A stretch of 63,118 nt of DNA, the filler included, from Octopus bimaculoides (taxonomy: Eukaryota): assembly GCF_001194135.2 (NCBI RefSeq). It is 4 parts of 4 records of this genome, joined end to end, with 100 filler letters (N's around TTAATTAATTAA, not from the genome) between each part and the next. Parts side by side here need not be neighbours in the genome. Positions count along the whole stretch, not along the records: positions 34,679 to 58,244 come from NC_069010.1; 3 more parts are not named here. One strand, written 5' to 3'. Below are positions 40,336 to 52,500 of this stretch, in pieces; the stretch's first letter is position 1, and each line of letters opens with the position of its first letter. The position numbers and the translations under genes were made by a program. Below the pieces are notes generated by a model. That model saw nothing but the letters and a program-made list of their open reading frames with translations, searched no databases and had not been told where the DNA came from.

Positions 40336-42915
40336 GTCTCACACCCACCAGTTTCTGGCAATGATAGTTCAGGCCATGCATGACCTCCACAACTTCACAC
40401 TAATGTTACAAATAAATTAAAGTTTAATTTAAAAATTAAATCTGGAGTTAAACTGATTTTTATATGGGTGTTTTGTTGAGGGTTTTGTTTTTCTAGGGCT
40501 GTGGATTGAATACTCGTTTATGCATCCCATATAACCCCTCCTAACTTTTATATTTTGGGGTATTTTCAGAAAACACTTGCGAATTTGTGTTCTACACACA
40601 GGAATTCAAATGGTCATGAAAAATGGGTTTTTACAGGTGGCATTATGTCATGCATGTCATGAGACTTTTGCCATTATGTCATGCATGAGAAGAAGACCCA
40701 TCAAGCCAAGCAAAATCACAGTCATGGTAGATATAGGTGGCACATAAAAGCACCCCCCATGGCACATAAAAGCACCCATTACTCTAGATTTTGTTGTTAC
40801 AATTTTACAGGCATGGCTGTGTGGTAACAAGCTTGCTTCTCAGCCTCATAGTTCCGAGTTCAGTCCCACTGCATGACACCTTGGGCAAGTGTCTTTTACT
40901 ATAGCCTCAGGCCGACCAAAGCCTTGTGAGTGGATTTGGTAGACGGAAACTGAAAGAAGCCTGTCATGTATATATTTATATATATATATATATATATATC
41001 GCCTGACTGGCCTCATGCGGGTGGCACGTAAAAGCACCCACTACACTCTTGGAGTGGTTGGTGTTAGGAAGGGCATCCAGCTGTAGAAACTCTACCAAAT
41101 CAGGATTGGAGCCTGGTCTAGCCATCCGGTTTCACCAGTCCTCAGTCNNNNNNNNNNGTGAGTGGATTTGGTAGACGGAAACTGAAAGAAGCCTGTCATG
41201 TATATATTTATATATATATATATATATATATCGCCTGACTGGCCTCATGCGGGTGGCACGTAAAAGCACCCACTACACTCTTGGAGTGGTTGGTGTTAGG
41301 AAGGGCATCCAGCTGTAGAAACTCTACCAAATCAGGATTGGAGCCTGGTCTAGCCATCCGGTTTCACCAGTCCTCAGTCAAATCGTCTAACCCATGCTAG
41401 CATGGAAAGCGGACGTTAAACGATGATGATGATGATGTGTGTGTGTGGAAGTGCAATGGCCCAGTGGTTAGGGCAGCGGACTCATGGCCATAGGATTGCG
41501 ATTTTGATTTCCAGACCAATTGAACAACATGGGAATCAAAGGGGTCCATGGGTAAAAAATAGTTGGAAAACATTGTTCTAGAGCAGGGGGTCACCAAACT
41601 TTTTCCAGAGCGGGCCAGCTAAATAAGAGAATAACAAGCGCTGGCCGCATAGCCATTTTGTTCAATACAATACAGTAAATACACAAAAAATAAAGACAAC
41701 TAACATATTTATTTACCAAAAAGTTATTAAAGAACGCAATGTTAGCAATAAGATGGTTATATCACACCCAATGCATACATAGGTGCAGGAGTGGTTGTGT
41801 GGTAAGTAGCTTGTTTACCAACTGCATGGTTCCGGGTTCATTTCCACTGCATGACACCTTGGGCAAGTGTCTTCTACTATAGCCTCGGGCCGACCAAAGC
41901 CTTGTGAGTGGATTTGGTAGGCGGAAACTGAAAGAAGCCCGTCGTATATATGTATGTGTGTGTATATGCTTGTGTGTCTGTGTTTGTCCCCCCTCAACAT
42001 CGCTTGACAACCGATGCTGGTGTGTTTACGTCCCCGTAACTTAGCGGTTTGGGAAATGGGACCGATAGAATAAGTACTAGGCTTCCAAATAATAAGTCCT
42101 GGGGTCGATTTGCTCGACTAAAAAGGGCGGTGCTCCAGCATGGCTGCAGTCAAATGACTGAAACAAGTAAAAGAGTATATCCGAATTTCACTTTTAAGAG
42201 GAGGTGATAATTCAAAGGATATAGTGAAACAGATACAGGTGTTTTGTTGTAGAGGAAGTATAAGGTTACCCAGCCGGAGAGAGAAAGATCTGGAAGGAAG
42301 GCAGAAACAGGTGAGCTACTGCAAAGAAAATACATGGTTGCCTAACCCGAGGGAAGTGCAGGTTAGGCAACCCTGTATCGAGGTCGATAAATTAAGTACC
42401 AGTTACGTACTGGGGATCAATCTAATTGTCTGGCCCTCTCCCCCCAAATTTCGGTGAGTGGTTATATCCTCGTTACCTAGTGTTTCGGCAAAGAAGATAG
42501 ACAGAAAAAGTATCAGGCTTTAAAGAAAGAGAAGTACTGGCATACATTCGCTCGAGGAATTCTTCAAGGCGGTGCTCCAGCATGGCCGCAGTTTAACGAC
42601 TGAAACAAGTGGCTCCGATATATATGTATGCGATGGGCTTCTTTCAGTTTCTGTCTGAGACTATAGTAAAAGAAATTCGCCGAAGGTGCCACACAGTGAG
42701 ACTGAACCCGAAACCTCATGGTTAGGAAGCAATATTCTTGCCACACAGCCACGCATGCGCCTCACTATTGTTTGTTGTTCAAATCCGTTGATGTTTTGAT
42801 ATCGGAGACAAATTCGGATCGCTGATGGAAGGAAGGACAGAGGGACGGAGGCGAGGAGAGAAGGAAGGAAGAAAGGGAGGGAGGAAAGACTGATTAAAGA
42901 CTTACGATATAAAAT

Positions 42916-44260
42916 CCGGACTTTTGCTTAAAGAAAGACGATTAATGACTTCACCGGAATTTCAAATAAAGGACTAGACCAGATTGCGCACACGCATATA
43001 CACACAGAATTTTCAAAAATTTACGCTGGATGATTTATAGAAAGAAAGACTGTTTTTCGAAAATTAAATTTTATATGAGACGAAATATTGAAAAATATGT
43101 AAAGATTGTTCAAGACTGAAGTGTATATAGCAAGCTTTATTAATGATTAACCGAAGCCGGACTTTTTATACGAAGGGGAACGGTTAAAGACAGAACCGGG
43201 CTTTGACATAAAGGAATATGTTTAATGGCCAGAGCGAGCAAGGCCAAACTGGACTTCAGTGTAAAAGGAGGCGTTAGAGGCCATGCTGTAGTGGTCGAAA
43301 ATAGGACAAGGACAAGCTGGAGTTTTACATTAAAGGAAATCGGTTCCAGGCTAGAGAAAACTACGCCGGACAGGTCACTGATAAGAACAAAACAAGACCG
43401 GACAAGCTATAGACTTGGCCGGACTAGCTAAAAACTGGACAAGGCAGGGAGACGTTAGACATCAAAGAAGTACTGGCCGGACTGGTTACAGATCAGAACA
43501 AGATTTAAGCTGGAGTTTTACACTAAAGGAAGGCCGGTCAAGACCAAGCCGGACAAGCTATATACTAGGACAAAGCCAGGCCGGACAAGCTAAAGACCAG
43601 ATACAGCCAGTGACACGTTAGAAATTATAGAAGGCAAGGCCGGATGGCTTAAAGACCAGGCTGGAATCTTACATTAAAGGAAGCCGGTTCAAGAGGAGAG
43701 AAAACCGGGCCGAACAGGTTATTGACCAGGGGTAGGTCAGACTGGAGTTTTATGTGGAGGTAGTCTTTAAGGATCAAACAAGGACAGACCGGACTGGCTG
43801 AAAATCAAGTAGAGCCATACTGGACTTTTACATAAATAAAATTCACGTATGACCGGGTGAGACGAGGCCGGACTTCAGCATAAAGGAAAGTGGTTGACGA
43901 TCAGAAAAGACCAAACCGACCAGGACAAGACCAAGCCGGAGTTTCATGTAAAGGACAGCAGTTGAAAGACCAGGTAAAGCCAGGATGGAATTTTACGTTA
44001 AAGGAGGGCGATTCGAGTCCAGACTAAGTCAGAGCCAGACTGGACTTTTACATAAGTAAAATTCACGTATGACCGGGCGAGACGAGGCCGGACTTCAGCA
44101 TAAAGGAAAGTTGTTGACGATCAGAAAAAGACCAAACCGACCAGGACAAGACCAAGCCGGAGTTTCATGTAAAGGACGGTAGTTCAAAGGCCAGGCTGGA
44201 ATTTTACGTTGAAGGAGGGCGATTCGAGTCCAGACTAAGTCAGGGCCAGACTGGACTTTG
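42916..44260 (+). repeat. Non-coding array of about 19 degenerate CYGGANTTY..TAAAGGA motifs with a terminal about 220-bp tandem duplication
   Basis: Motif starts near 42916, 42954, 43157, 43196, 43249, 43317, 43510, 43661, 43742, 43820, 43868, 43936, 43985, 44040, 44088, 44157, 44196 and 44251. 43821-44040 is duplicated at 44041-44251. Confidence 0.85.
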
Positions 44261-44295
44261 GTCTTTTGTGAAGAAAGAGAGGATGCGAAGGAGAG

Positions 44296-45169
44296 ATGGA
44301 CTGCGACATCAAATCTGAAAACTATAGTATTAGCAATAACAACAACAACAACAACAACAGTAATAATAGCAATAATGGTAACATTGATATTATTATTAAT
44401 AAGAACGATGACGACGACGACGATAACAAACATGTTATTCACATTGAAGACGACTCTCCGACCGCGACCACCACAGTTAATTCCGTCGAAGACAACCTCG
44501 TCGATACCAAAGGCAGTGCAAACAACAGCAGCAGCAGTGCATCAAACGTCACAACAAACACCGCGACCAACAACAGCAGCAGCAGTGAGCTCCGCCGTCA
44601 ACACTATCTCCTCCAGGAGCAGCGTTATCGCCATCTACAGCAACAGAGACAACAACAGCGCCACGTGAACAGCCGCAGCATCAACATCACATCATCGTCG
44701 TCATCGTCACCATCGTTGTCATCATCGTTAAACTCGTCGTCGTCCTCGTCCACCACCACCGCCTCCTCCTCCTCCTCCTCCTCCAACACCACCACTTCCA
44801 CCACAAATACTATCACCACTACCACCCCCACCACTCACAACAACTACAGGAACAACAACAAACATGTCGATAAAACGTTCGGTTTGTTGAAGTGTGACTC
44901 CGAATGTGTGCCGCAAGAGAAGCTGGTGGAGTTTTTGGCCAGCAAGCCGAAATTCAACCAGGCTGTCATGATTAGGAAAGGCAGGCAAATTATGCGGAAA
45001 GATTTGGTAGGCATCGAAGAAGGACCCAACGGATTTCTTACAGATATATTCCATCCTGTGTTTGCAATCACGCCTTCCAGGAGGTGCATTGTCGTGAAAG
45101 AGGACCTCTTGTGCAACGGCGAAGGAAGCTGTCGACGAAAATGTGGCGGAATCGGGGACTGCATTATTG
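44296..45169 (+). CDS. Exon 1 of a 4-exon Cys/His-cluster (WRKY-GCM1/FAR1-like zinc finger) gene
   Basis: ATG 44296 with an in-frame stop upstream at 44236. Low-complexity N-terminus, then globular sequence ending CNGEGSCRRKCGGIGDCII. Donor G|GTAAGT at 45169/45170 (phase 1). An upstream exon using acceptor ttttgtgaag (44273) cannot be excluded. Confidence 0.85.
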
Positions 45170-45867
45170 GTAAGTCTCTCAGACCGTTCAATATCTTTCC
45201 TTGCACGTCATCATCATCATCATCATCATTTAATGTCTGTTGTTTTCTGTGCTGATATGGGTTGGACGGCTTGACAGGGACTGGCAAGGTCAGGCAGGGA
45301 CTACACCAGGTCCCATAGCCTGTTTTAGCTTGGTTTCTACAACTGGATGCCCTTCCTAATGCCAACCACTCCATATAGTGTACTGAGGGCGTTTTATGTG
45401 GCACCATTACCAATGCTTTTTACGTGGTACCAGTACCCACACCAATGCTTTTTATATGGAACCTTTTAGGATCACAATTCTGTTGAGGTGGGCCACTCTG
45501 TACACACACACATACACATGACAAACATATATACAACAGGCTTTTTTCAGTTTCTGTCTACCAAATTCATTCAACATGCTTTAGTCAGCCCAAGGCTATG
45601 TATGGTATAAGACACTTGTCCAACATGAAGTGGAACTGAACCCAGAACCATGTGGTTGGGAAGCTAACTTCTTAACCACCATCATCATCATCATTGTCAT
45701 CGTCAACATCCTCATCATCATCATCGTTGTTGTCATCATCATCGTCATCGTCACCACCATCGTCATCGTCACCACCATCGTCGTCATCATATGTTGTTTC
45801 TCTAGCAGGGATTGGACTATGTGTAATTCTATGTGTAATTCTTTTATTGTGTCCATTTTTTTTCCAG

Positions 45868-46037
45868 ATTGTCCAAAGAAGACCGAACGGGCCAAGATGG
45901 GCCACCGCTGCTCCTTCAAAGTTCTCCTCACTATGCATTCCGACCAGATAGGTATGTGGGAGGTGAAACTGATCGGAAGTCACATGGAGCCGGAATACGC
46001 GTGGGTGCCACCCATCAAGAAAGTAAAATGGAGAAAG
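45868..46037 (+). CDS. Exon 2 of the zinc-finger-like gene
   Basis: Acceptor ttttttttccag. Phase 1 gives DCPKKTERAKMGHRCSFKVLLTMHSDQIGMWEVKLIGSHMEPEYAWVPPIKKVKWRK. Donor AAG|GTATTG (phase 0). Confidence 0.88.
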
Positions 46038-46479
46038 GTATTGTTTTTTATTCTTTTACTCTTTTATTTGTCTCAGTCACTTGACCGTGGCCCTGATGGA
46101 GGCCTACTGCCTTGAAGGGTTTTAGTTGAACAAATCGACCCCAGGACTTTTAAAAGCCTAGTACTTTGGTCTCTATTGCTGAACCACTAAGTTACAGGGA
46201 GGAATTCCTCTCAACACATGGCTATGTTCCTCCACTACTTCTGCTCGTGATCAGAGATGCACATATCGTCAGCCACCAAGGGATATGCTCAACTGGTTAA
46301 GGTCAAGCAACTGACAAGTAAATCTGTGATATTCAGCAGAATATTTGCTGTAGCCCATCTTTTACACCCAGACAAAACAATGTACATGATAGCACTTCCA
46401 ATCAGTTAAGATGAGAAGTCATGAGAGCCACTGCCTGGTACCTGCATCAGGGCAATTATTATTATTATTATTATTATTA

Positions 46480-46640
46480 TTGCCTTTGCACAGCTTCTAA
46501 CGCTGGAGATGTACTACAGTGTCAGCTGTTCACTACCAGTGAACTAAGGTAACACCCCTTATTTTTCGAGCACCATCCGAAGTATTCAAGCAGTTCCAAG
46601 CAGTGCTGTTTTCTGCAAGTGCTCCACCCTTATTGCAGCC
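46480..46640 (-). mobile_element. R4/Dong LINE 3' end with (AAT)n tail
   Basis: Homologous to 31442-31575. Confidence 0.7.
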
Positions 46641-46873
46641 CCTATTATCATTATTATGTACTAGGTCAATACTTGTTGATGCACATAACTTTTCTTAGAT
46701 TGTTCAAAGTGTAAGTCTTATTTTTAGAGCCTGTGTTGCATTGTTTATATGTTGAGAGACACACAAGCAGCCAAAGAAAACGATGGCACATTGGTTAGAG
46801 TGCAGGTCTAACAATCATGAGGTAGTGGGTTCGATCTTTATATGGAACTAAGCACCATTTTTACCAATTTCAG

Positions 46874-47011
46874 GTCCATTCCCACACAAAGGCACTGAAA
46901 AAAGCTCTCCAACACCGAAAGAATTCAGTTCTGCAATTCGATTGGCCAGTGAAACCAAGTTTTGCAGCTGAAAAAAAAGAAACCACAGAATTCTTGATCC
47001 AGACAAATTCT
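46874..47011 (+). CDS. Exon 3 of the zinc-finger-like gene
   Basis: Acceptor aatttcag, 138 nt open in phase 0 (VHSHTKALKKALQHRKNSVLQFDWPVKPSFAAEKKETTEFLIQTNS), donor TCT|GTGAGT. Confidence 0.78.
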
Positions 47012-47288
47012 GTGAGTATGTTTCTTTCTAGCTTCATTTGCAATTATGTATGAGTTAATTAGTCTCCAGAAATTTTATTTATTTATTTATTTTTTTTTTA
47101 ATTGTTTCAGTCGTTTGACTGTGGCCATGCTGGAGCACCGCCTTTAGTCGAGCAAATCGACCTCCAGGACTTATTCTTTGTAACCCTAGTACTTATTCTA
47201 TCGGTCTCTTTTGCCAAACTGCTATGTTACAGGGACGTAGACACGCCACCATCGGTTGTCAAGTGATGGTGAGGGGACAAACGTACAT

Positions 47289-47327
<39 letters not shown>

Positions 47328-47660
47328 CGAAGGCTGTGTGGTTAGGAAGCTTGCTTCCCAGCTACATGGTTTCAGGTTCAGTCCCACTGCGTGGCACCTT
47401 GGGCAAGTGTCTTCTCCTATAGCCCCGGGCCGAACGAAGCTTTGTGATTGAATTTGGTAGGCGGAAGTTACTGCCGTGTGTGTATATGTCTGTGTATGTG
47501 CCTCTCCGAAAGAGAGAGAGAGAAGACACAGTTGGACTGTATATATATATATATATGTATGTATGTATGTATATGCATGTGTATTTATGTATAGATATGT
47601 ATACATGTACATGCAAACTGTGTATATAATTATCGATTACCTTTTCTTTTTAATTTCCAG

Positions 47661-48605
47661 TTTGAGAAGTCGACCCCGTTAGCCATGGAATCCAGCAACA
47701 TCTGCGGACTATCCTCTTCACAGCTGAGCCAGATTCAATCCCAGATGTTTGTCCAAAAAGAAGAGGCAGCCTTCGAAGAATTTCCGACCAACAACGACCA
47801 AATGGACAACTGCAACAGTAGCTCCTCAGGCCAACTGGCCGTATACTCCACTGCCGGCACCACTGCTGCCAATCAGAACTCTATGGTGTACCAGAAGGTC
47901 GAACTCTGCGATGACTACGATGACTATTATATAGATAGTGGCCATCAACATAGTGGTGGTGGCAGTGGCGGAGGAAGTGGTATTGGTGGTGGTGGTGGAG
48001 TTGTTGATGATGATGACGATGACAATAACGAAGATGATGACAATGCTGATGACGGTTACTCCAGCATCATTAATATGAATTTCAACGGCATCCGCAGCGC
48101 CAACATCAACAACAACAACAATAACAGTAACTTCTTTGTCAACAACAGCAACAGCAAGACCAACAGCAGCAACGCTGTGGCGTCTGCCGCTTCTTCCGCT
48201 GCCGCTGCTGCTGCGGCAGCTGGGATGGTCCGGCTGTTACCGCTGTCGTCCGCTTCCGCTGCATCCTCGGCAGCGGCGGCCGCTGCTGCTGCTTCCGCTG
48301 CTGCCACCGCGATGGACTTCTCGGAGGCGGCGGTCGGAAAAAGTGGCAGGATTGGGGCGGGTGGTGTTGGTGGCGGCGGTTTGGAAGAGGTGGTGGAGGA
48401 CACTCTTAGCTTTGAGGAACACCTCTTGGACTTCCATCGTGCCGAACACGAACAACGGATGGCGTTTATGTCGCAGGAACATCTTGCGAAGATGGAGGTG
48501 ATCGCTTTGGAGAAGGACATTGCTTTGTTGAAGAGACAGAAACTGGTCAACGAACTCGGCGCCAGTTTGAAGAAATGTGACAATATTCTCTTGACAGAGC
48601 AATGA
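47661..48605 (+). CDS. Exon 4 (terminal) of the zinc-finger-like gene
   Basis: Acceptor cttttctttttaatttccag in phase 0, in frame with ORF 47685-48605. Poly-G/D/N/A tracts and C-terminal EHEQRMAFMSQEHLAKMEVIALEKDIALLKRQKL coil. AATAAA near 49161. Confidence 0.88.
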   Translation, partial: FEKSTPLAMESSNICGLSSSQLSQIQSQMFVQKEEAAFEEFPTNNDQMDNCNSSSSGQLAVYSTAGTTAANQNSMVYQKVELCDDYDDYYIDSGHQHSGGGSGGGSGIGGGGGVVDDDDDDNNEDDDNADDGYSSIINMNFNGIRSANINNNNNNSNFFVNNSNSKTNSSNAVASAASSAAAAAAAAGMVRLLPLSSASAASSAAAAAAAASAAATAMDFSEAAVGKSGRIGAGGVGGGGLEEVVEDTLSFEEHLLDFHRAEHEQRMAFMSQEHLAKMEVIALEKDIALLKRQKLVNELGASLKKCDNILLTEQ

Positions 48606-48816
48606 CACGTACACATGTTCATACGTTCATACACATGGACAGTTATACACATACATACACACACACAAATATATACAACATATATATACATGTGTTTATA
48701 CAGATACTTAAGGTTTGTTCTACACATATATATAGATGCAAGTATTTATACATAGATACACCCTGATAGTTTTATATATACACACACACACGTGTATATA
48801 CACTCACACATACATG

Positions 48817-48875
<59 letters not shown>

Positions 48876-49989
48876 ATATATGTATATATATATATACACA
48901 TACATACATACATATATATACACATACATACTCACATATATCACACACAATCAGTTATACACATATGCAAACACACACAGACATGCATAGATACAAAGAG
49001 ACACACATACACACACACTCAAACATATCCAAACAGAGGGAGACAGGGTTACACACATACACATACAAATACAAATAAACAGACACATTCAGACATGGAC
49101 ACACACAAACACAAACATGCCCTCTCTCTCTTTCTCATAAAATTCTCAATTTGGCCAGTAAATAAATAAAAAAAAATAAACTGCAAAAAGTATTTAAAAA
49201 ATTATATAAATAACAATAATAATAATAATAATAACAACAATGTATTTTTGTTATTTCTTTTGTGTTGGTGTTGTTAATTGTGTTGCCCCATGATTCTTAT
49301 AGTGTTGTAGTCCACCTGGTTGTAAGTAGTTACCAGTTACCACAAGGTGGCATTATTTTCTTTCGTACTCAGACACAGGCTAGGTGGTGTGGTAAGAAGC
49401 TTGCATGGTACCTTGGGCAAGTGTTTTCTTCTATAGCAGTAGTTCCCAGACTGTTTTCTTTATTCATTCATGGGGCTGCATTTTTAGAATGAAAATTTCC
49501 TTTCGCCTCATCAAAGGACCAGAGAGAGATGCTTAAAGGGAGATAACCACGGGATAACTCCCTCCTCCAATTTGTGGACCCATTTTACTATATTCTCAAT
49601 ACTTAATATACAGTAAGCCCACTACTATCACGAGTGTTACATTCCAAAACCCAACACGAGAGGTGAAAATCCACGAAGTAGTACTGTATATTTTTACCCC
49701 CTGCCTTAGCGAAGGCAGGGGTATTGTTTTCAATCATACTTGTTCGTTTGTTTGTTTGTCCATGGACAAGATATCTCGAGAACCGCAGATTGGAGCCTGG
49801 TGTCGCATCCTGGTCCACCAGTCCCCAGTCAAATCGTCCAACCCATGCTAGCATGGAAGGCGGACGTTAAACGACGATGATGATGAATATAATTTGCAAG
49901 CTCCATTTGGTCCTAGTTGCTTTTCGATGGAAAGGTCACGGATGGAGAGGCGCTGAGTGTAGGTCCCACTGGATTGGGGTTGACCTGAG

Positions 49990-51821: not shown

Positions 51822-52500
51822 CAGAGTCTTGCAGATAAATTGGGACCAATTCTAATCCTCTTCTTCATTTTTCAGGTAAATAGCAAACTAATTCGACAAC
51901 AGAAAAGTCATGGAACAACAGAAACGTTTCACCATTGTTACTTTGGCATGTGCCAGGCACGCTACCAATAAAATTGTTAAGCTGACGAAACTTCCAAAAG
52001 CAACAGTTTATTGTGTGTATGAACAATTCAAAGAGGGAAAGATTGATAGAAAAGAACACAAAACTCAAAGTGATTCCAAGTGCTTTCCAAAGTTTCCCAA
52101 TGGCCTCAAATGCTCGATTGGAGCCAACCCACCCACGTCAACTGTTGCAAAGAAACGCAATGTGTCCCTTTTTACGGTGTTCAGAGCTGTGTACAGGAAC
52201 CTTGGCATGACTAGCTATGTTTGATGACGCCATCATCTCCTAACAGCCGAGACCAAAGCAATCAGAGCTTCTGTCATTCATCAAGCATCAAGGTGCAGGA
52301 AACATTCACATGTTTGTGGATGAGAAGTTTACTGTGGATGCTGAGGTGAATCGCAGAAATTCTCGACTGATTGCATACAACCCTTCAGGTGTCCCCACTG
52401 CATTTGAGACCAAGAATCCTGTATCTGTGATGGTATTTGGAGTCGTGGAAAGTGATAGAAGTGTCATGGATCCACACTTCATTGAGTCTGGCTGCAATCA
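51822..52500 (+). mobile_element. Decayed, 3'-truncated Tc1/maT-like (probable D,D37D) transposon
   Basis: TA|cagagtcttgcagataaattgggacc end, HTH-like ORF 51910-52224, and FVDEKFTVDAEVNRRNSR...TKNPVSVMVFGVVESD catalytic-domain start. Confidence 0.8.

What the first reader, a model, noticed from the sequence alone, without database searches (positions are those of the whole stretch)
44296..48605. Complete about 708-aa gene with an unusual Cys/His cluster resembling transposase-derived WRKY-GCM1/FAR1 zinc fingers
Seen: four exons splice in consistent phase (1,0,0). The junction creates C-x5-C-x3-C-x5-C-x3-C-x10-H-x-C-x23-H (CNGEGSCRRKCGGIGDCIIDC...GHRCSFKVLL...WEVKLIGSH), followed by a basic KKVKWRK stretch. 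Established: C.F.V...W.V...G.H endings typify the WRKY-GCM1 fold found in MULE transposases, FAR1 and GCM. No DDE catalytic domain is encoded. Inference: a domesticated DNA-binding domain with an extra duplicated CxGxGxC module, acting as a lineage-specific transcription factor.
Basis: partly seen in the sequence, partly recalled or inferred. Interest (0 to 1): 0.7.

Follow-up and report, generated by a model that had tools for sequence, protein, structure and literature searches.

The report
Octopus gene with WRKY-like zinc domain
This is a real, conserved octopus gene (already in RefSeq as an uncharacterized protein) whose core is an unnamed two-zinc domain that looks like the WRKY/GCM DNA-binding fold and sits at the front of Mutator-like transposases in other organisms, so it is most likely a transposon-related transcription factor.

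Summary
Exons 44296-45169, 45868-46037, 46874-47011 and 47661-48605 (+) splice GT/AG in phases 1,0,0. The 708-aa product is identical to RefSeq XP_014785019.2 (uncharacterized LOC106879828, Octopus bimaculoides). The Cys/His pattern is exactly as described.

The eight ligands (C273, C279, C283, C289, C293, H304, C306, H330) are 96-100% conserved in a family of at least 74 clusters. Named members come from molluscs, echinoderms, a hemichordate, amphioxus and a chytrid. No Pfam model or PDB sequence matches.

A confident AlphaFold model (pLDDT 88) has WRKY DNA-binding domains as its top PDB matches (prob 0.94, TM 0.57-0.59, but E only 0.07). In at least four subfamilies the domain lies N-terminal to a MULE-like transposase. 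Profile comparisons with WRKY and GCM are not significant, and the C-terminal HxH/HxC dyad is reduced to one His.

The gene is not mobile. It has no DDE domain and no TIRs, its intron positions match Argonauta, ELMO is the upstream neighbour in both, and omega is at most about 0.13.

Best reading: a divergent, insert-containing WRKY-GCM1-like domain with two zinc sites, acting as a DNA-binding regulator. The domain is not lineage-specific; only the cephalopod gene with its C-terminal helix is. DNA binding is inferred, not shown.

The parts
44296..45169 (+). Exon 1 (aa 1-291 plus first base of codon 292): low-complexity N-terminus (poly-N/S/T/D/Q), then the start of the conserved domain
   Evidence: ATG preceded by an in-frame stop; GTAAGT donor at 45170; identical to XP_014785019.2
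44893..45084 (+). N-terminal alpha/beta subdomain of the conserved domain (aa 200-263; V.QE.L..FL.S.P.F..A.M.RKGR...K..V....G..GFL.D.F)
   Evidence: Profile positions 18-80 match many homologues; AF2 blocks at pLDDT 90-97 with beta-alpha-alpha-beta-beta-beta; weak wHTH-type Pfam hints only
45085..45169 (+). First part of the Cys/His subdomain (aa 264-291): core strand IVVKEDLLC ending in C273, then C279, invariant R281, C283 and C289 (two CxGxGxC modules)
   Evidence: C273 100%, C279 100%, R281 100%, C283 98%, C289 98% conserved
45170..45867 (+). Intron 1 (phase 1), splitting codon D292 between C289 and C293; contains a (CAT)n/(GAT)n microsatellite and a SINE-like fragment
   Evidence: GT/AG; same position in Argonauta; many truncated models in other species end here; repeats
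45868..46013 (+). Second part of the Cys/His subdomain (aa 292-340): C293, H304, C306, strands KVLLTMH and MWEVKLI, H330, W337-x-P-P
   Evidence: C293 96%, H304 98%, C306 100%, G328 96%, H330 98%, W322 69%, W337 84% conserved; strands E110-116 and E122-128 in the model
46017..46037 (+). Basic stretch KKVKWRK (aa 342-348), a possible NLS or DNA-backbone contact, at the end of exon 2
   Evidence: Read from the sequence; basic but not sequence-conserved in homologues
46038..46873 (+). Intron 2 (phase 0)
   Evidence: GT/AG; same position in Argonauta
46874..47011 (+). Exon 3 (aa 349-394), a basic linker, weakly conserved
   Evidence: the Argonauta and cuttlefish products continue with a similar basic segment
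47012..47660 (+). Intron 3 (phase 0), carrying dispersed SINE-like repeats and TA/CA microsatellites
   Evidence: GT/AG; repeat pairs D5 and I1
47661..48605 (+). Exon 4 (aa 395-708 plus stop): acidic, Gly, Asn and Ala low-complexity tracts, then the C-terminal module
48390..48602 (+). Conserved C-terminal helical module (aa 638-708; LLDFHRxEHxxRMxxxxxEHxAxMEVIxLEKDIAxxKRQKL...CDNIxLTE), a probable oligomerisation helix
   Evidence: 60% identity to cuttlefish P0001 (E 8e-25) and 48% to the Argonauta exon at L005 19224-19367; no Pfam hit; no relatives outside cephalopods

Best explanation
LOC106879828 is a fixed, intron-containing host gene. It encodes a probable nuclear DNA-binding regulator.

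Its structured core (aa about 200-340) belongs to an unnamed but widespread eukaryotic domain family. The family combines a small alpha/beta N-terminal extension with a WRKY/GCM-like beta-sheet. Between the two core cysteines of that sheet (C273 and C306) lies a 32-residue, Gly/Cys-rich, zinc-knuckle-like insert. Eight near-invariant ligands (six Cys and two His) are enough for two zinc ions, one holding the sheet and one holding the insert. This parallels GCM, where a zinc module sits in the same insert.

The same domain heads MULE-like transposases in other eukaryotes, at the position of the element's DNA-binding domain. The octopus gene is therefore best read as a transposase-related (probably domesticated) DNA-binding domain. 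It has been joined to long low-complexity regions and a cephalopod-specific C-terminal helix that probably mediates oligomerisation.

Shown here: the gene model, family-wide conservation of the ligands, the predicted fold and its best PDB matches, linkage to MULE-like transposases in relatives, purifying selection, conserved introns and synteny.

Inferred: zinc binding and its stoichiometry, DNA binding, transcription-factor role, direction of the transposon-host transfer, and oligomerisation through the C-terminal helix.
For: - Gene model and identity to XP_014785019.2.
- Family of 74 clusters at E<=1e-3 in an exhaustive HMMER search. Named members come from Octopus paralogues, Aplysia, Mya, Biomphalaria, Pomacea, Elysia, Patella, Patiria, Amphiura, Ptychodera, Branchiostoma and the chytrid Nowakowskiella.
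- Ligand positions 96-100% conserved, with R281 and G275 invariant.
- AF2 model with the 65-sequence alignment has pLDDT 88 and pTM 0.79.
- Foldseek against the PDB ranks AtWRKY18-DNA (7z0u_A, prob 0.94, TM 0.57), 7z0r_B (0.92, 0.59) and the RRS1 WRKY domain (5w3x_D, 0.77, 0.58) first, with AtWRKY1 (2ayd) further down. All other hits have prob below 0.15. The viral library gives only noise.
- The family fits the features Babu et al. 2006 give for the insert-containing WRKY-GCM1 family and for the origin of GCM1.
- P0079 has the domain at aa 3-90 and Pfam MULE at 194-266 (E 2.3e-8). Its post-domain region is homologous to P0090 (4e-16), the 29-member P0065 cluster (about 1e-12) and P0055 (1.7e-4).
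- Host-gene status: no transposase in the product or the piece; no flanking TIRs; intron positions shared with Argonauta; ELMO upstream in both; dN 0.24 against saturated dS, so omega is at most about 0.13.
- The architecture (DBD-like core, basic stretch, low-complexity tracts, conserved terminal helix) is typical of transcription factors (inference).
Against: - No sequence-level link to any WRKY-GCM1 family. Pfam gives nothing at E up to 10 for the octopus core. One member reaches DBD_Tnp_Mut only at E 0.099. Nothing appears after removing the insert in silico. hhalign gives 1.4% against WRKY and 2.4% against GCM.
- Foldseek E-values are weak (0.07-0.45; no match at E<=0.001). GCM, Aft2 and FLYWCH structures are not among the top 50 hits.
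- The superfamily's C-terminal HxH/HxC dyad is a single His here.
- The strand that aligns with WRKYGQK is acidic (L-[DST]-D-x-F), so the DNA-contact mode, if there is one, cannot be copied from WRKY.
- Only 4 of 74 clusters are transposase-linked. More of them (15 of the 44 longer relatives scanned) are fused to a MogA-like MoCF_biosynth domain, which does not obviously suggest DNA binding.
Confidence: 0.6

Rival explanations
1. An independent (convergent) zinc domain, not homologous to WRKY-GCM1. On this view the family is a new superfamily whose small beta-sheet only resembles WRKY, and which was recruited separately by MULE-like transposases, MogA-fusion proteins and cephalopod regulators. 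It may still bind DNA.
For: All profile tests against WRKY, GCM and the Pfam WRKY-GCM1 families fail. Foldseek E-values are at least 0.07. The ligand set is C6H2 with one terminal His instead of C2H2/C2HC. The strand equivalent to WRKYGQK is acidic.
Against: The only coherent set of PDB matches is WRKY, with prob up to 0.94 and TM above 0.5 on the WRKY length. The register agrees with hhalign's best path. The positions of the core Cys, the insert, the conserved W in the last strand and the His after it match the published description of the insert-containing family. So does the N-terminal position in MULE-like transposases.
Confidence: 0.2
2. A zinc-stabilised module that binds RNA or protein rather than DNA. 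The knuckle-like insert (C-x3-C-x5-C-x3-C) and the basic residues would contact RNA or a partner protein, and the gene would be a scaffold or RNA regulator.
For: The insert weakly resembles the CCHC knuckle of TUT4/TUT7 (E 0.056-0.76). Many relatives are fused to a MogA-like domain or sit in very large proteins rather than typical transcription-factor architectures.
Against: The knuckle similarity is not significant and the spacing and ligands differ from CCHC. The domain occupies the DNA-binding position of MULE-like transposases. The best structural matches are DNA-bound WRKY domains.
Confidence: 0.12
3. A metal-, redox- or cofactor-sensing module. The six Cys and two His would bind an Fe-S cluster or another metal, or act as a redox switch, and couple cofactor status to regulation. 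In the long relatives this would work together with the molybdopterin-binding-type domain.
For: The ligand density is unusually high and Gly-rich loops are invariant. The domain is recurrently fused to MoCF_biosynth in several phyla. From established knowledge, yeast Aft1/Aft2, which Babu et al. place in the WRKY-GCM1 superfamily (abstract), are iron-responsive regulators.
Against: There is no significant match to any Fe-S family; only noise-level hits in single members. The octopus gene has no MoCF domain. Nothing here tests metal identity.
Confidence: 0.06
4. A decaying transposon fragment or annotation artefact with no function.
For: The domain is shared with MULE-like elements. The octopus protein is half low-complexity sequence.
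Against: The ORF is intact with canonical splice sites. Orthologues exist in cuttlefish and Argonauta with 65-76% identity in the core. Transcripts are seen in 59 runs. Introns and synteny are conserved. dN is far below dS. There are no TIRs and no transposase remnant.
Confidence: 0.02

Closest known systems
[quoted passage not shown]
   Same: A small beta-sheet metal-binding domain. The two core Cys are separated by an insert. There is a conserved W in the last strand followed by G-x-H. The domain sits at the N-terminus of MULE-type transposases, and transposase-free copies exist in animals and fungi. WRKY domains are the best PDB matches to the model.
   Different: No detectable sequence-profile similarity. 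There is a single C-terminal His instead of HxH/HxC. The insert is itself a conserved metal-binding module with four extra Cys and one His. An additional conserved N-terminal alpha/beta extension is present. The strand equivalent to the DNA-contacting one is acidic.
GCM (glial cells missing) DNA-binding domain, PDB 1odh
   Same: A WRKY-GCM1-type sheet carrying a second zinc-binding module inside the insert between the core Cys, as Babu et al. describe for the origin of GCM1. It is animal-specific and acts as a transcription factor without a transposase.
   Different: hhalign probability is 2.4%. 1odh is not among the top 50 Foldseek hits. The inserts have different sequence and ligand spacing: a Zn ribbon in GCM against a CxGxGxC-x3-CGGxGxC-x3-C knuckle-like loop here.
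Classical WRKY domain (e.g. AtWRKY18 7z0u, AtWRKY4 1wj2)
   Same: Best structural matches (prob 0.94, TM 0.57-0.59 normalised to the WRKY length). hhalign's best path gives the same strand register.
   Different: No WRKYGQK motif and no C-x4-5-C or HxH. There is a 32-residue insert. hhalign probability is 1.4%. WRKY is mainly a plant family.
CCHC zinc knuckle (e.g. TUT4/TUT7 C-terminal knuckle)
   Same: The local pattern C-x-R-x-C-G-x-x-G-x-C-x3-C-P-K aligns with C-R-x-C-G-K-x-G-H-x4-C-P-K.
   Different: Not significant (E 0.056-0.76). The ligands are Cys at different spacing, and the motif is embedded in a larger domain.

Membership tests
WRKY-GCM1 superfamily (insert-containing family) | Four-stranded antiparallel beta-sheet core shared by WRKY and GCM1 | tested here: inconclusive
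   The AF2 model (pLDDT 88) has the expected strands. The top PDB matches are WRKY domains (prob 0.94/0.92/0.77, TM 0.57-0.59 on target length), but E is 0.07-0.45 and no GCM, Aft2 or FLYWCH structure is in the top 50.
WRKY-GCM1 superfamily (insert-containing family) | Two N-terminal metal-chelating Cys with an insert between them | tested here: met
   C273 (end of strand IVVKEDLLC) and C306 (start of strand SFKVLL) are both 100% conserved and separated by a 32-residue insert.
WRKY-GCM1 superfamily (insert-containing family) | C-terminal metal-chelating dyad HxH or HxC after the last strand | tested here: not met
   Only H330 is conserved (98%). Position +2 is variable (E in octopus; the family consensus is G-x-H-V-P). 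A fourth ligand must come from elsewhere, with H304 or an insert Cys as candidates.
WRKY-GCM1 superfamily (insert-containing family) | [quoted passage not shown] 2006, section 10) | tested here: met
   W322 in strand MWEVKLI is W in 69% of members and otherwise V or M.
WRKY-GCM1 superfamily (insert-containing family) | Significant sequence-profile match to WRKY, FAR1, DBD_Tnp_Mut, FLYWCH or GCM models | tested here: not met
   Pfam at E up to 10 gives none for the octopus core. One of 65 members reaches DBD_Tnp_Mut at E 0.099. None appears after deleting the insert. hhalign gives 1.4% (WRKY) and 2.4% (GCM).
WRKY-GCM1 superfamily (insert-containing family) | Occurrence at the N-terminus of MULE transposases | tested here: met
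   This holds in relatives, not in the octopus gene. P0079 has the domain at aa 3-90 and Pfam MULE at 194-266 (E 2.3e-8). P0090, P0055 and the P0065 cluster share that post-domain region.
WRKY-GCM1 superfamily (insert-containing family) | Zinc-dependent sequence-specific DNA binding | not testable with these tools
   Needs metal analysis and DNA-binding assays.
Autonomous MULE/Mutator-like transposon | DDE/RNase H-like MULE catalytic domain | tested here: not met
   No Pfam transposase domain in the 708-aa product. tblastn of three MULE-like regions against the whole piece gives E above 0.6.
Autonomous MULE/Mutator-like transposon | Terminal inverted repeats flanking the coding unit; variable genomic position | tested here: not met
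   No TIR pair brackets the gene, and the long repeat pairs are dispersed SINE-like copies with one arm in an intron. Introns and the ELMO neighbour are conserved with Argonauta.
CCHC zinc knuckle | C-x2-C-x4-H-x4-C | tested here: not met
   The spacing here is C-x3-C-x5-C-x3-C with no His. The profile hit to TUT4 has E 0.056.

The most novel reading that the evidence does not exclude
The C6H2 domain is an undescribed, ancient (opisthokont-wide) metal- or cofactor-sensing DNA-binding module. Its Cys-rich insert would bind something other than structural zinc (an Fe-S cluster, or a redox-labile or Mo-related metal). In marine invertebrates it would be coupled to a MogA-like molybdopterin-binding domain to make cofactor-responsive regulators. 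Cephalopods would have kept a stand-alone version as a lineage-specific transcription factor.
Probability: 0.08. Interest if true: 0.8.

Novelty: new variant of a known kind. Interest (0 to 1): 0.5.

Why it matters
The gene is already annotated, but only as "uncharacterized". Its core domain has no Pfam model and no solved relative detectable by sequence.

This work defines a conserved C6H2 domain family with a clear signature: L-x-C-x-G-x-G-N-C-x-R-x-C-G-G-x-G-x-C-x3-C ... H-x-C-S ... W-x-V ... G-x-H ... W-x-P-P. The family spans lophotrochozoans, ambulacrarians, amphioxus and a chytrid. The work also gives a confident structural model and ties the family, at fold and context level, to the WRKY-GCM1/MULE world.

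If the reading is confirmed, it would add:
- another case of a DNA-binding domain shared between transposases and host regulators in animals;
- a parallel to GCM, with a second metal module inserted at the same place;
- candidate regulators specific to cephalopods (three octopus paralogues);
- an unexplained MogA-like fusion architecture in marine invertebrates.

For genome annotation, a profile built from alignment A3 would let dozens of "hypothetical" proteins be named.

Tried and rejected
- Pfam on the whole product, the core and the C-terminal helix gave nothing relevant. The one hit, DUF2207_C at E 0.058, falls in a low-complexity region and was rejected.
- PDB sequence search with the core gave nothing. 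With the family profile it gave only a non-significant TUT4/7 knuckle match.
- The first AF2 run, with a 3-sequence alignment, had pLDDT 35 and was discarded.
- The search for homologous proteins with the 65-sequence profile returned only 4 proteins. With the C-terminal helix it returned none. These are limits of the word index and are not informative about biology.
- Deleting the Cys-rich insert in silico and rescanning Pfam gave no WRKY, FAR1, FLYWCH or MuDR hit.
- hhalign against five verified PDB WRKY domains and against mouse GCM (1odh) was not significant.
- Foldseek against viral predicted structures gave noise.
- dN/dS for Octopus against Argonauta: dS is saturated, so only an upper bound on omega is available.
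- The bacterial promoter/terminator scan of the upstream region is irrelevant for a eukaryote and found nothing.
- A literature search for LOC106879828 found no papers.
- A heptad count on the C-terminal helix showed no clean coiled-coil register (best 11 of 21 a/d positions hydrophobic). I therefore call it a conserved helix with probable oligomerisation, not an established coiled coil.
- A winged-helix assignment for the N-terminal subdomain was considered. Only weak Pfam hints support it (E 0.003-0.03 in 5-7 members), and the model's order of elements is not a canonical wHTH, so it is left open.

Full report
**1. The observation**

I read 44000-48900 and rebuilt the spliced product independently. 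Four exons (44296-45169, 45868-46037, 46874-47011, 47661-48605, + strand) join through GT...AG introns in phases 1, 0 and 0. The result is a 2127-nt CDS of 708 codons plus stop, with an in-frame stop upstream of the ATG.

The exact sequence is in NCBI as XP_014785019.2, "uncharacterized protein LOC106879828 [Octopus bimaculoides]". Earlier models were 595 and 484 aa.

The Cys/His pattern is exactly as stated: C273-x5-C279-x3-C283-x5-C289-x3-C293-x10-H304-x-C306-x23-H330. Intron 1 splits codon 292. KKVKWRK lies at aa 342-348. The two CxGxGxC modules are CNGEGSC and CGGIGDC.

**2. Is the gene real and used?**

A first homology search found a cuttlefish-type protein (P0001, 384 aa; its cluster includes Acanthosepion pharaonis CAE1305157.1) and an Argonauta hians partial protein (P0002).

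P0001 is encoded as one uninterrupted ORF on short contigs from 59 sequencing runs. These contigs share a 5' end and have long AT-rich 3' regions, so they are transcripts. The ORF aligns across all three junction positions of the octopus gene.

The Argonauta genomic locus (L005) has introns at the same two positions flanking exon 2. It also has a C-terminal exon that its annotation misses. Its upstream neighbour is ELMO, and window 35599-35748 encodes the last ELMO exon at 90% identity. Synteny is therefore conserved.

No inverted repeats bracket the gene. The long repeats are dispersed SINE-like copies shared between the flanks and the introns. No MULE-like coding remnant exists anywhere in the piece.

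Between Octopus and Argonauta the core has dN 0.24 with saturated dS (1.8 or undefined), so omega is at most about 0.13.

Two modules are conserved among cephalopods:
- the core (aa about 188-350), 65-76% identical;
- a C-terminal helix (aa 638-708), 48-60% identical.

Everything else is low-complexity sequence. It is greatly expanded in octopus, whose protein is 708 aa against 384 aa in cuttlefish.

**3. What the core is**

Pfam (24,736 models) and PDB sequences give nothing for the core. An exhaustive HMMER search of 1.84 billion representatives with the three-sequence profile found 74 clusters at E<=1e-3.

Named members are:
- two further octopus paralogues (LOC106869118 and the LOC115226066 group);
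- Aplysia, Mya, Biomphalaria, Pomacea, Elysia and Patella;
- the starfish Patiria and the brittle star Amphiura;
- the hemichordate Ptychodera;
- Branchiostoma;
- the chytrid Nowakowskiella.

All are annotated as uncharacterized or hypothetical, or carry names from an unrelated fused domain. Other members come from unnamed environmental eukaryotes.

The aligned family shows two parts:
- an N-terminal subdomain: V.QE.L..FL.S.P.F..A.M.RKGR..K..V...G..GFL.D.F, often followed by LTE.G;
- the Cys/His part: L.C.G.GNC.R.CGG.G.C...C ... H.CS..V.L ... W.V...G.H.P....W.PP.

All eight ligand positions are 96-100% conserved, R281 and G275 are invariant, and the octopus-only C264 and H315 are not conserved. 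Six Cys and two His are what two tetrahedral zinc sites need. That zinc is the bound metal is inference.

Many gene models in other species end just after CGG.G.C..G, which is at the octopus intron-1 position. This suggests the intron is old.

**4. Fold**

With three sequences AlphaFold failed (pLDDT 35). With the 65-sequence alignment it gave a confident model of aa 200-345 (pLDDT 88, pTM 0.79). The order of elements is:
- strand, two short helices, then four strands, the last being IVVKEDLLC ending in C273;
- a 35-residue loop carrying the Cys cluster (pLDDT 72-87);
- two final strands, KVLLTMH and MWEVKLI, followed by H330.

Foldseek against 350,542 PDB chains ranked WRKY DNA-binding domains first:
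- 7z0u_A, AtWRKY18 bound to W-box DNA: prob 0.94, TM 0.57 on the WRKY length;
- 7z0r_B: prob 0.92, TM 0.59;
- 5w3x_D, the RRS1 WRKY domain: prob 0.77, TM 0.58.

Other WRKY entries (7z0r_A, 8iex, 2ayd) follow further down the list. Every non-WRKY hit had prob below 0.15. The E-values are weak, however (0.07-0.45). The viral structure library gave only incoherent noise, which serves as a negative control.

**5. Comparison with the WRKY-GCM1 superfamily**

Babu et al. 2006 (PMC1702500) define an insert-containing family. [quoted passage not shown] It is mostly the N-terminal DNA-binding domain of MULE transposases, and transposase-free copies in animals and fungi may be recruited transcription factors. 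They suggest GCM1 arose when a Zn ribbon entered that insert.

The present family has the following:
- the two core Cys with an insert (met);
- the W in the last strand (69% W, met);
- a metal-binding module inside the insert (parallel to GCM);
- a link to MULE-like transposases. P0079 has the domain at aa 3-90 followed by Pfam MULE at 194-266 (E 2.3e-8). Its post-domain region is homologous to P0090 (4e-16), the 29-member P0065 cluster (about 1e-12) and P0055 (1.7e-4).

Against membership:
- The C-terminal HxH/HxC dyad is a single His.
- Pfam WRKY, FAR1, FLYWCH, GCM and MuDR-DBD models do not match. One member reaches DBD_Tnp_Mut at E 0.099, and nothing matches after removing the insert.
- hhalign against five verified PDB WRKY domains gives 1.4%, and against mouse GCM 2.4%.
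- hhalign's best path and the Foldseek match imply the same register: FLTDIF on WRKYGQK, and GSHMEP on GKHNHD. But that strand is acidic here, so a WRKY-like DNA contact cannot simply be assumed.

I therefore treat the family as WRKY-GCM1-like in fold and context. It is probably a very divergent insert-containing member, but not a demonstrated one.

**6. Other architectures**

Fifteen of the 44 longer relatives scanned have an N-terminal MoCF_biosynth (MogA/gephyrin-G-like) domain, about 450 residues with no assignment, and then this domain. Examples are Amphiura P0038 (MoCF 10-155, domain 770-846), Patiria, Ptychodera, Patella, Mya and Aplysia.

A Biomphalaria model joins the domain to PUS3, which may be a gene-model fusion. 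A decapodiform-type transcript (P0021) has two tandem copies of the domain. The octopus paralogue P0107 and P0021 end in a different leucine-rich helix.

The C-terminal helix of the window gene has no relatives outside cephalopods and no Pfam match.

**7. Mechanism proposed**

Shown: a conserved, selected, expressed host gene; a conserved eight-ligand domain; a WRKY-like predicted fold; and the transposase context of relatives.

Inferred: the domain binds two zinc ions, one at the sheet (C273, C306, H330 and one more ligand) and one in the insert. It binds DNA, perhaps through the R-K-G-R motif (aa 227-230), the invariant R281 and the basic tail. The low-complexity tracts act as regulatory or activation regions. 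The C-terminal helix oligomerises the protein.

I put 0.6 on this reading. The rivals are:
- a convergent, non-homologous zinc domain (0.2), which concerns origin rather than function;
- an RNA- or protein-binding module (0.12);
- a metal, redox or cofactor sensor (0.06);
- a dead transposon fragment (0.02).

**8. Novelty and verdict**

The gene is known only as an uncharacterized locus. The domain family appears unnamed: there is no Pfam model in a 2025 copy, no match to PDB sequences, and no paper on the locus.

It is best classed as a new variant of a known kind, namely a transposase-associated zinc DNA-binding domain of the WRKY/GCM type. Its distinguishing features are a C6H2 signature, an extra N-terminal subdomain and an unexpected MogA-like fusion partner in marine invertebrates.

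Interest is moderate (0.5).

Noticed in passing
window 35599-35757 (+): This is the last coding exon of an ELMO (engulfment and cell motility) gene, 90% identical at protein level to the Argonauta hians ELMO C-terminus. ELMO is the upstream neighbour of this gene in both octopods.
   Followed up: yes
window 43100-44270 (+), directly upstream of the ATG: An array of degenerate repeats of about 60-70 bp with the core CCGGACTTTTACATAAAGGA, plus a tandem duplication of about 220 bp (43811-43974 vs 44031-44195, 94-96% identical). It lies in the presumed promoter or 5'UTR. Function is unknown.
   Followed up: partly
window 40926-41379: A 232-bp unit repeated 2.0 times at 100% identity, spanning a short N gap (41148-41157). 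It is probably an assembly artefact rather than biology.
   Followed up: no
window 41282-42102, 45319-45373, 47164-47466, 49806-49886: Dispersed SINE-like repeat copies (81-91% identical, direct and inverted) are shared between the 5' flank, introns 1 and 3, and the 3' flank. They are not TIRs of the gene.
   Followed up: partly
window 44330-44830 and 47940-48320 (exons 1 and 4): Coding microsatellites (poly-N, poly-S/T, poly-D, poly-G, poly-A) make the octopus protein 708 aa, against 384 aa for the cuttlefish orthologue. Intron 1 also has a (CAT)n tract at 45680-45790.
   Followed up: partly
window 51910-52224 (+): A 104-aa ORF with a weak homeodomain-like HTH_23 match (E 0.009). It is probably a Tc1/mariner-type transposase remnant and is unrelated to the finding.
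   Followed up: no
relatives P0038, P0041, P0042, P0054 and others (no window coordinates): An undescribed architecture in starfish, brittle star, hemichordate, limpet, clam and Aplysia: an N-terminal MoCF_biosynth (MogA-like) domain, about 450 residues with no assignment, then the same C6H2 domain.
   Followed up: partly
L005 19224-19367 (Argonauta hians BAAFZT010000072.1): The Argonauta annotation (GAB1608891.1, partial, 271 aa) misses the N-terminal extension (tblastn match from L005 9869) and the conserved C-terminal helix exon. The gene is longer than annotated.
   Followed up: partly
relative P0021 (Logan transcript contigs): A cephalopod-type paralogue carries two complete tandem copies of the domain (aa 99-236 and 298-429) and a leucine-rich C-terminal helix shared with octopus LOC106869118.
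   Followed up: no
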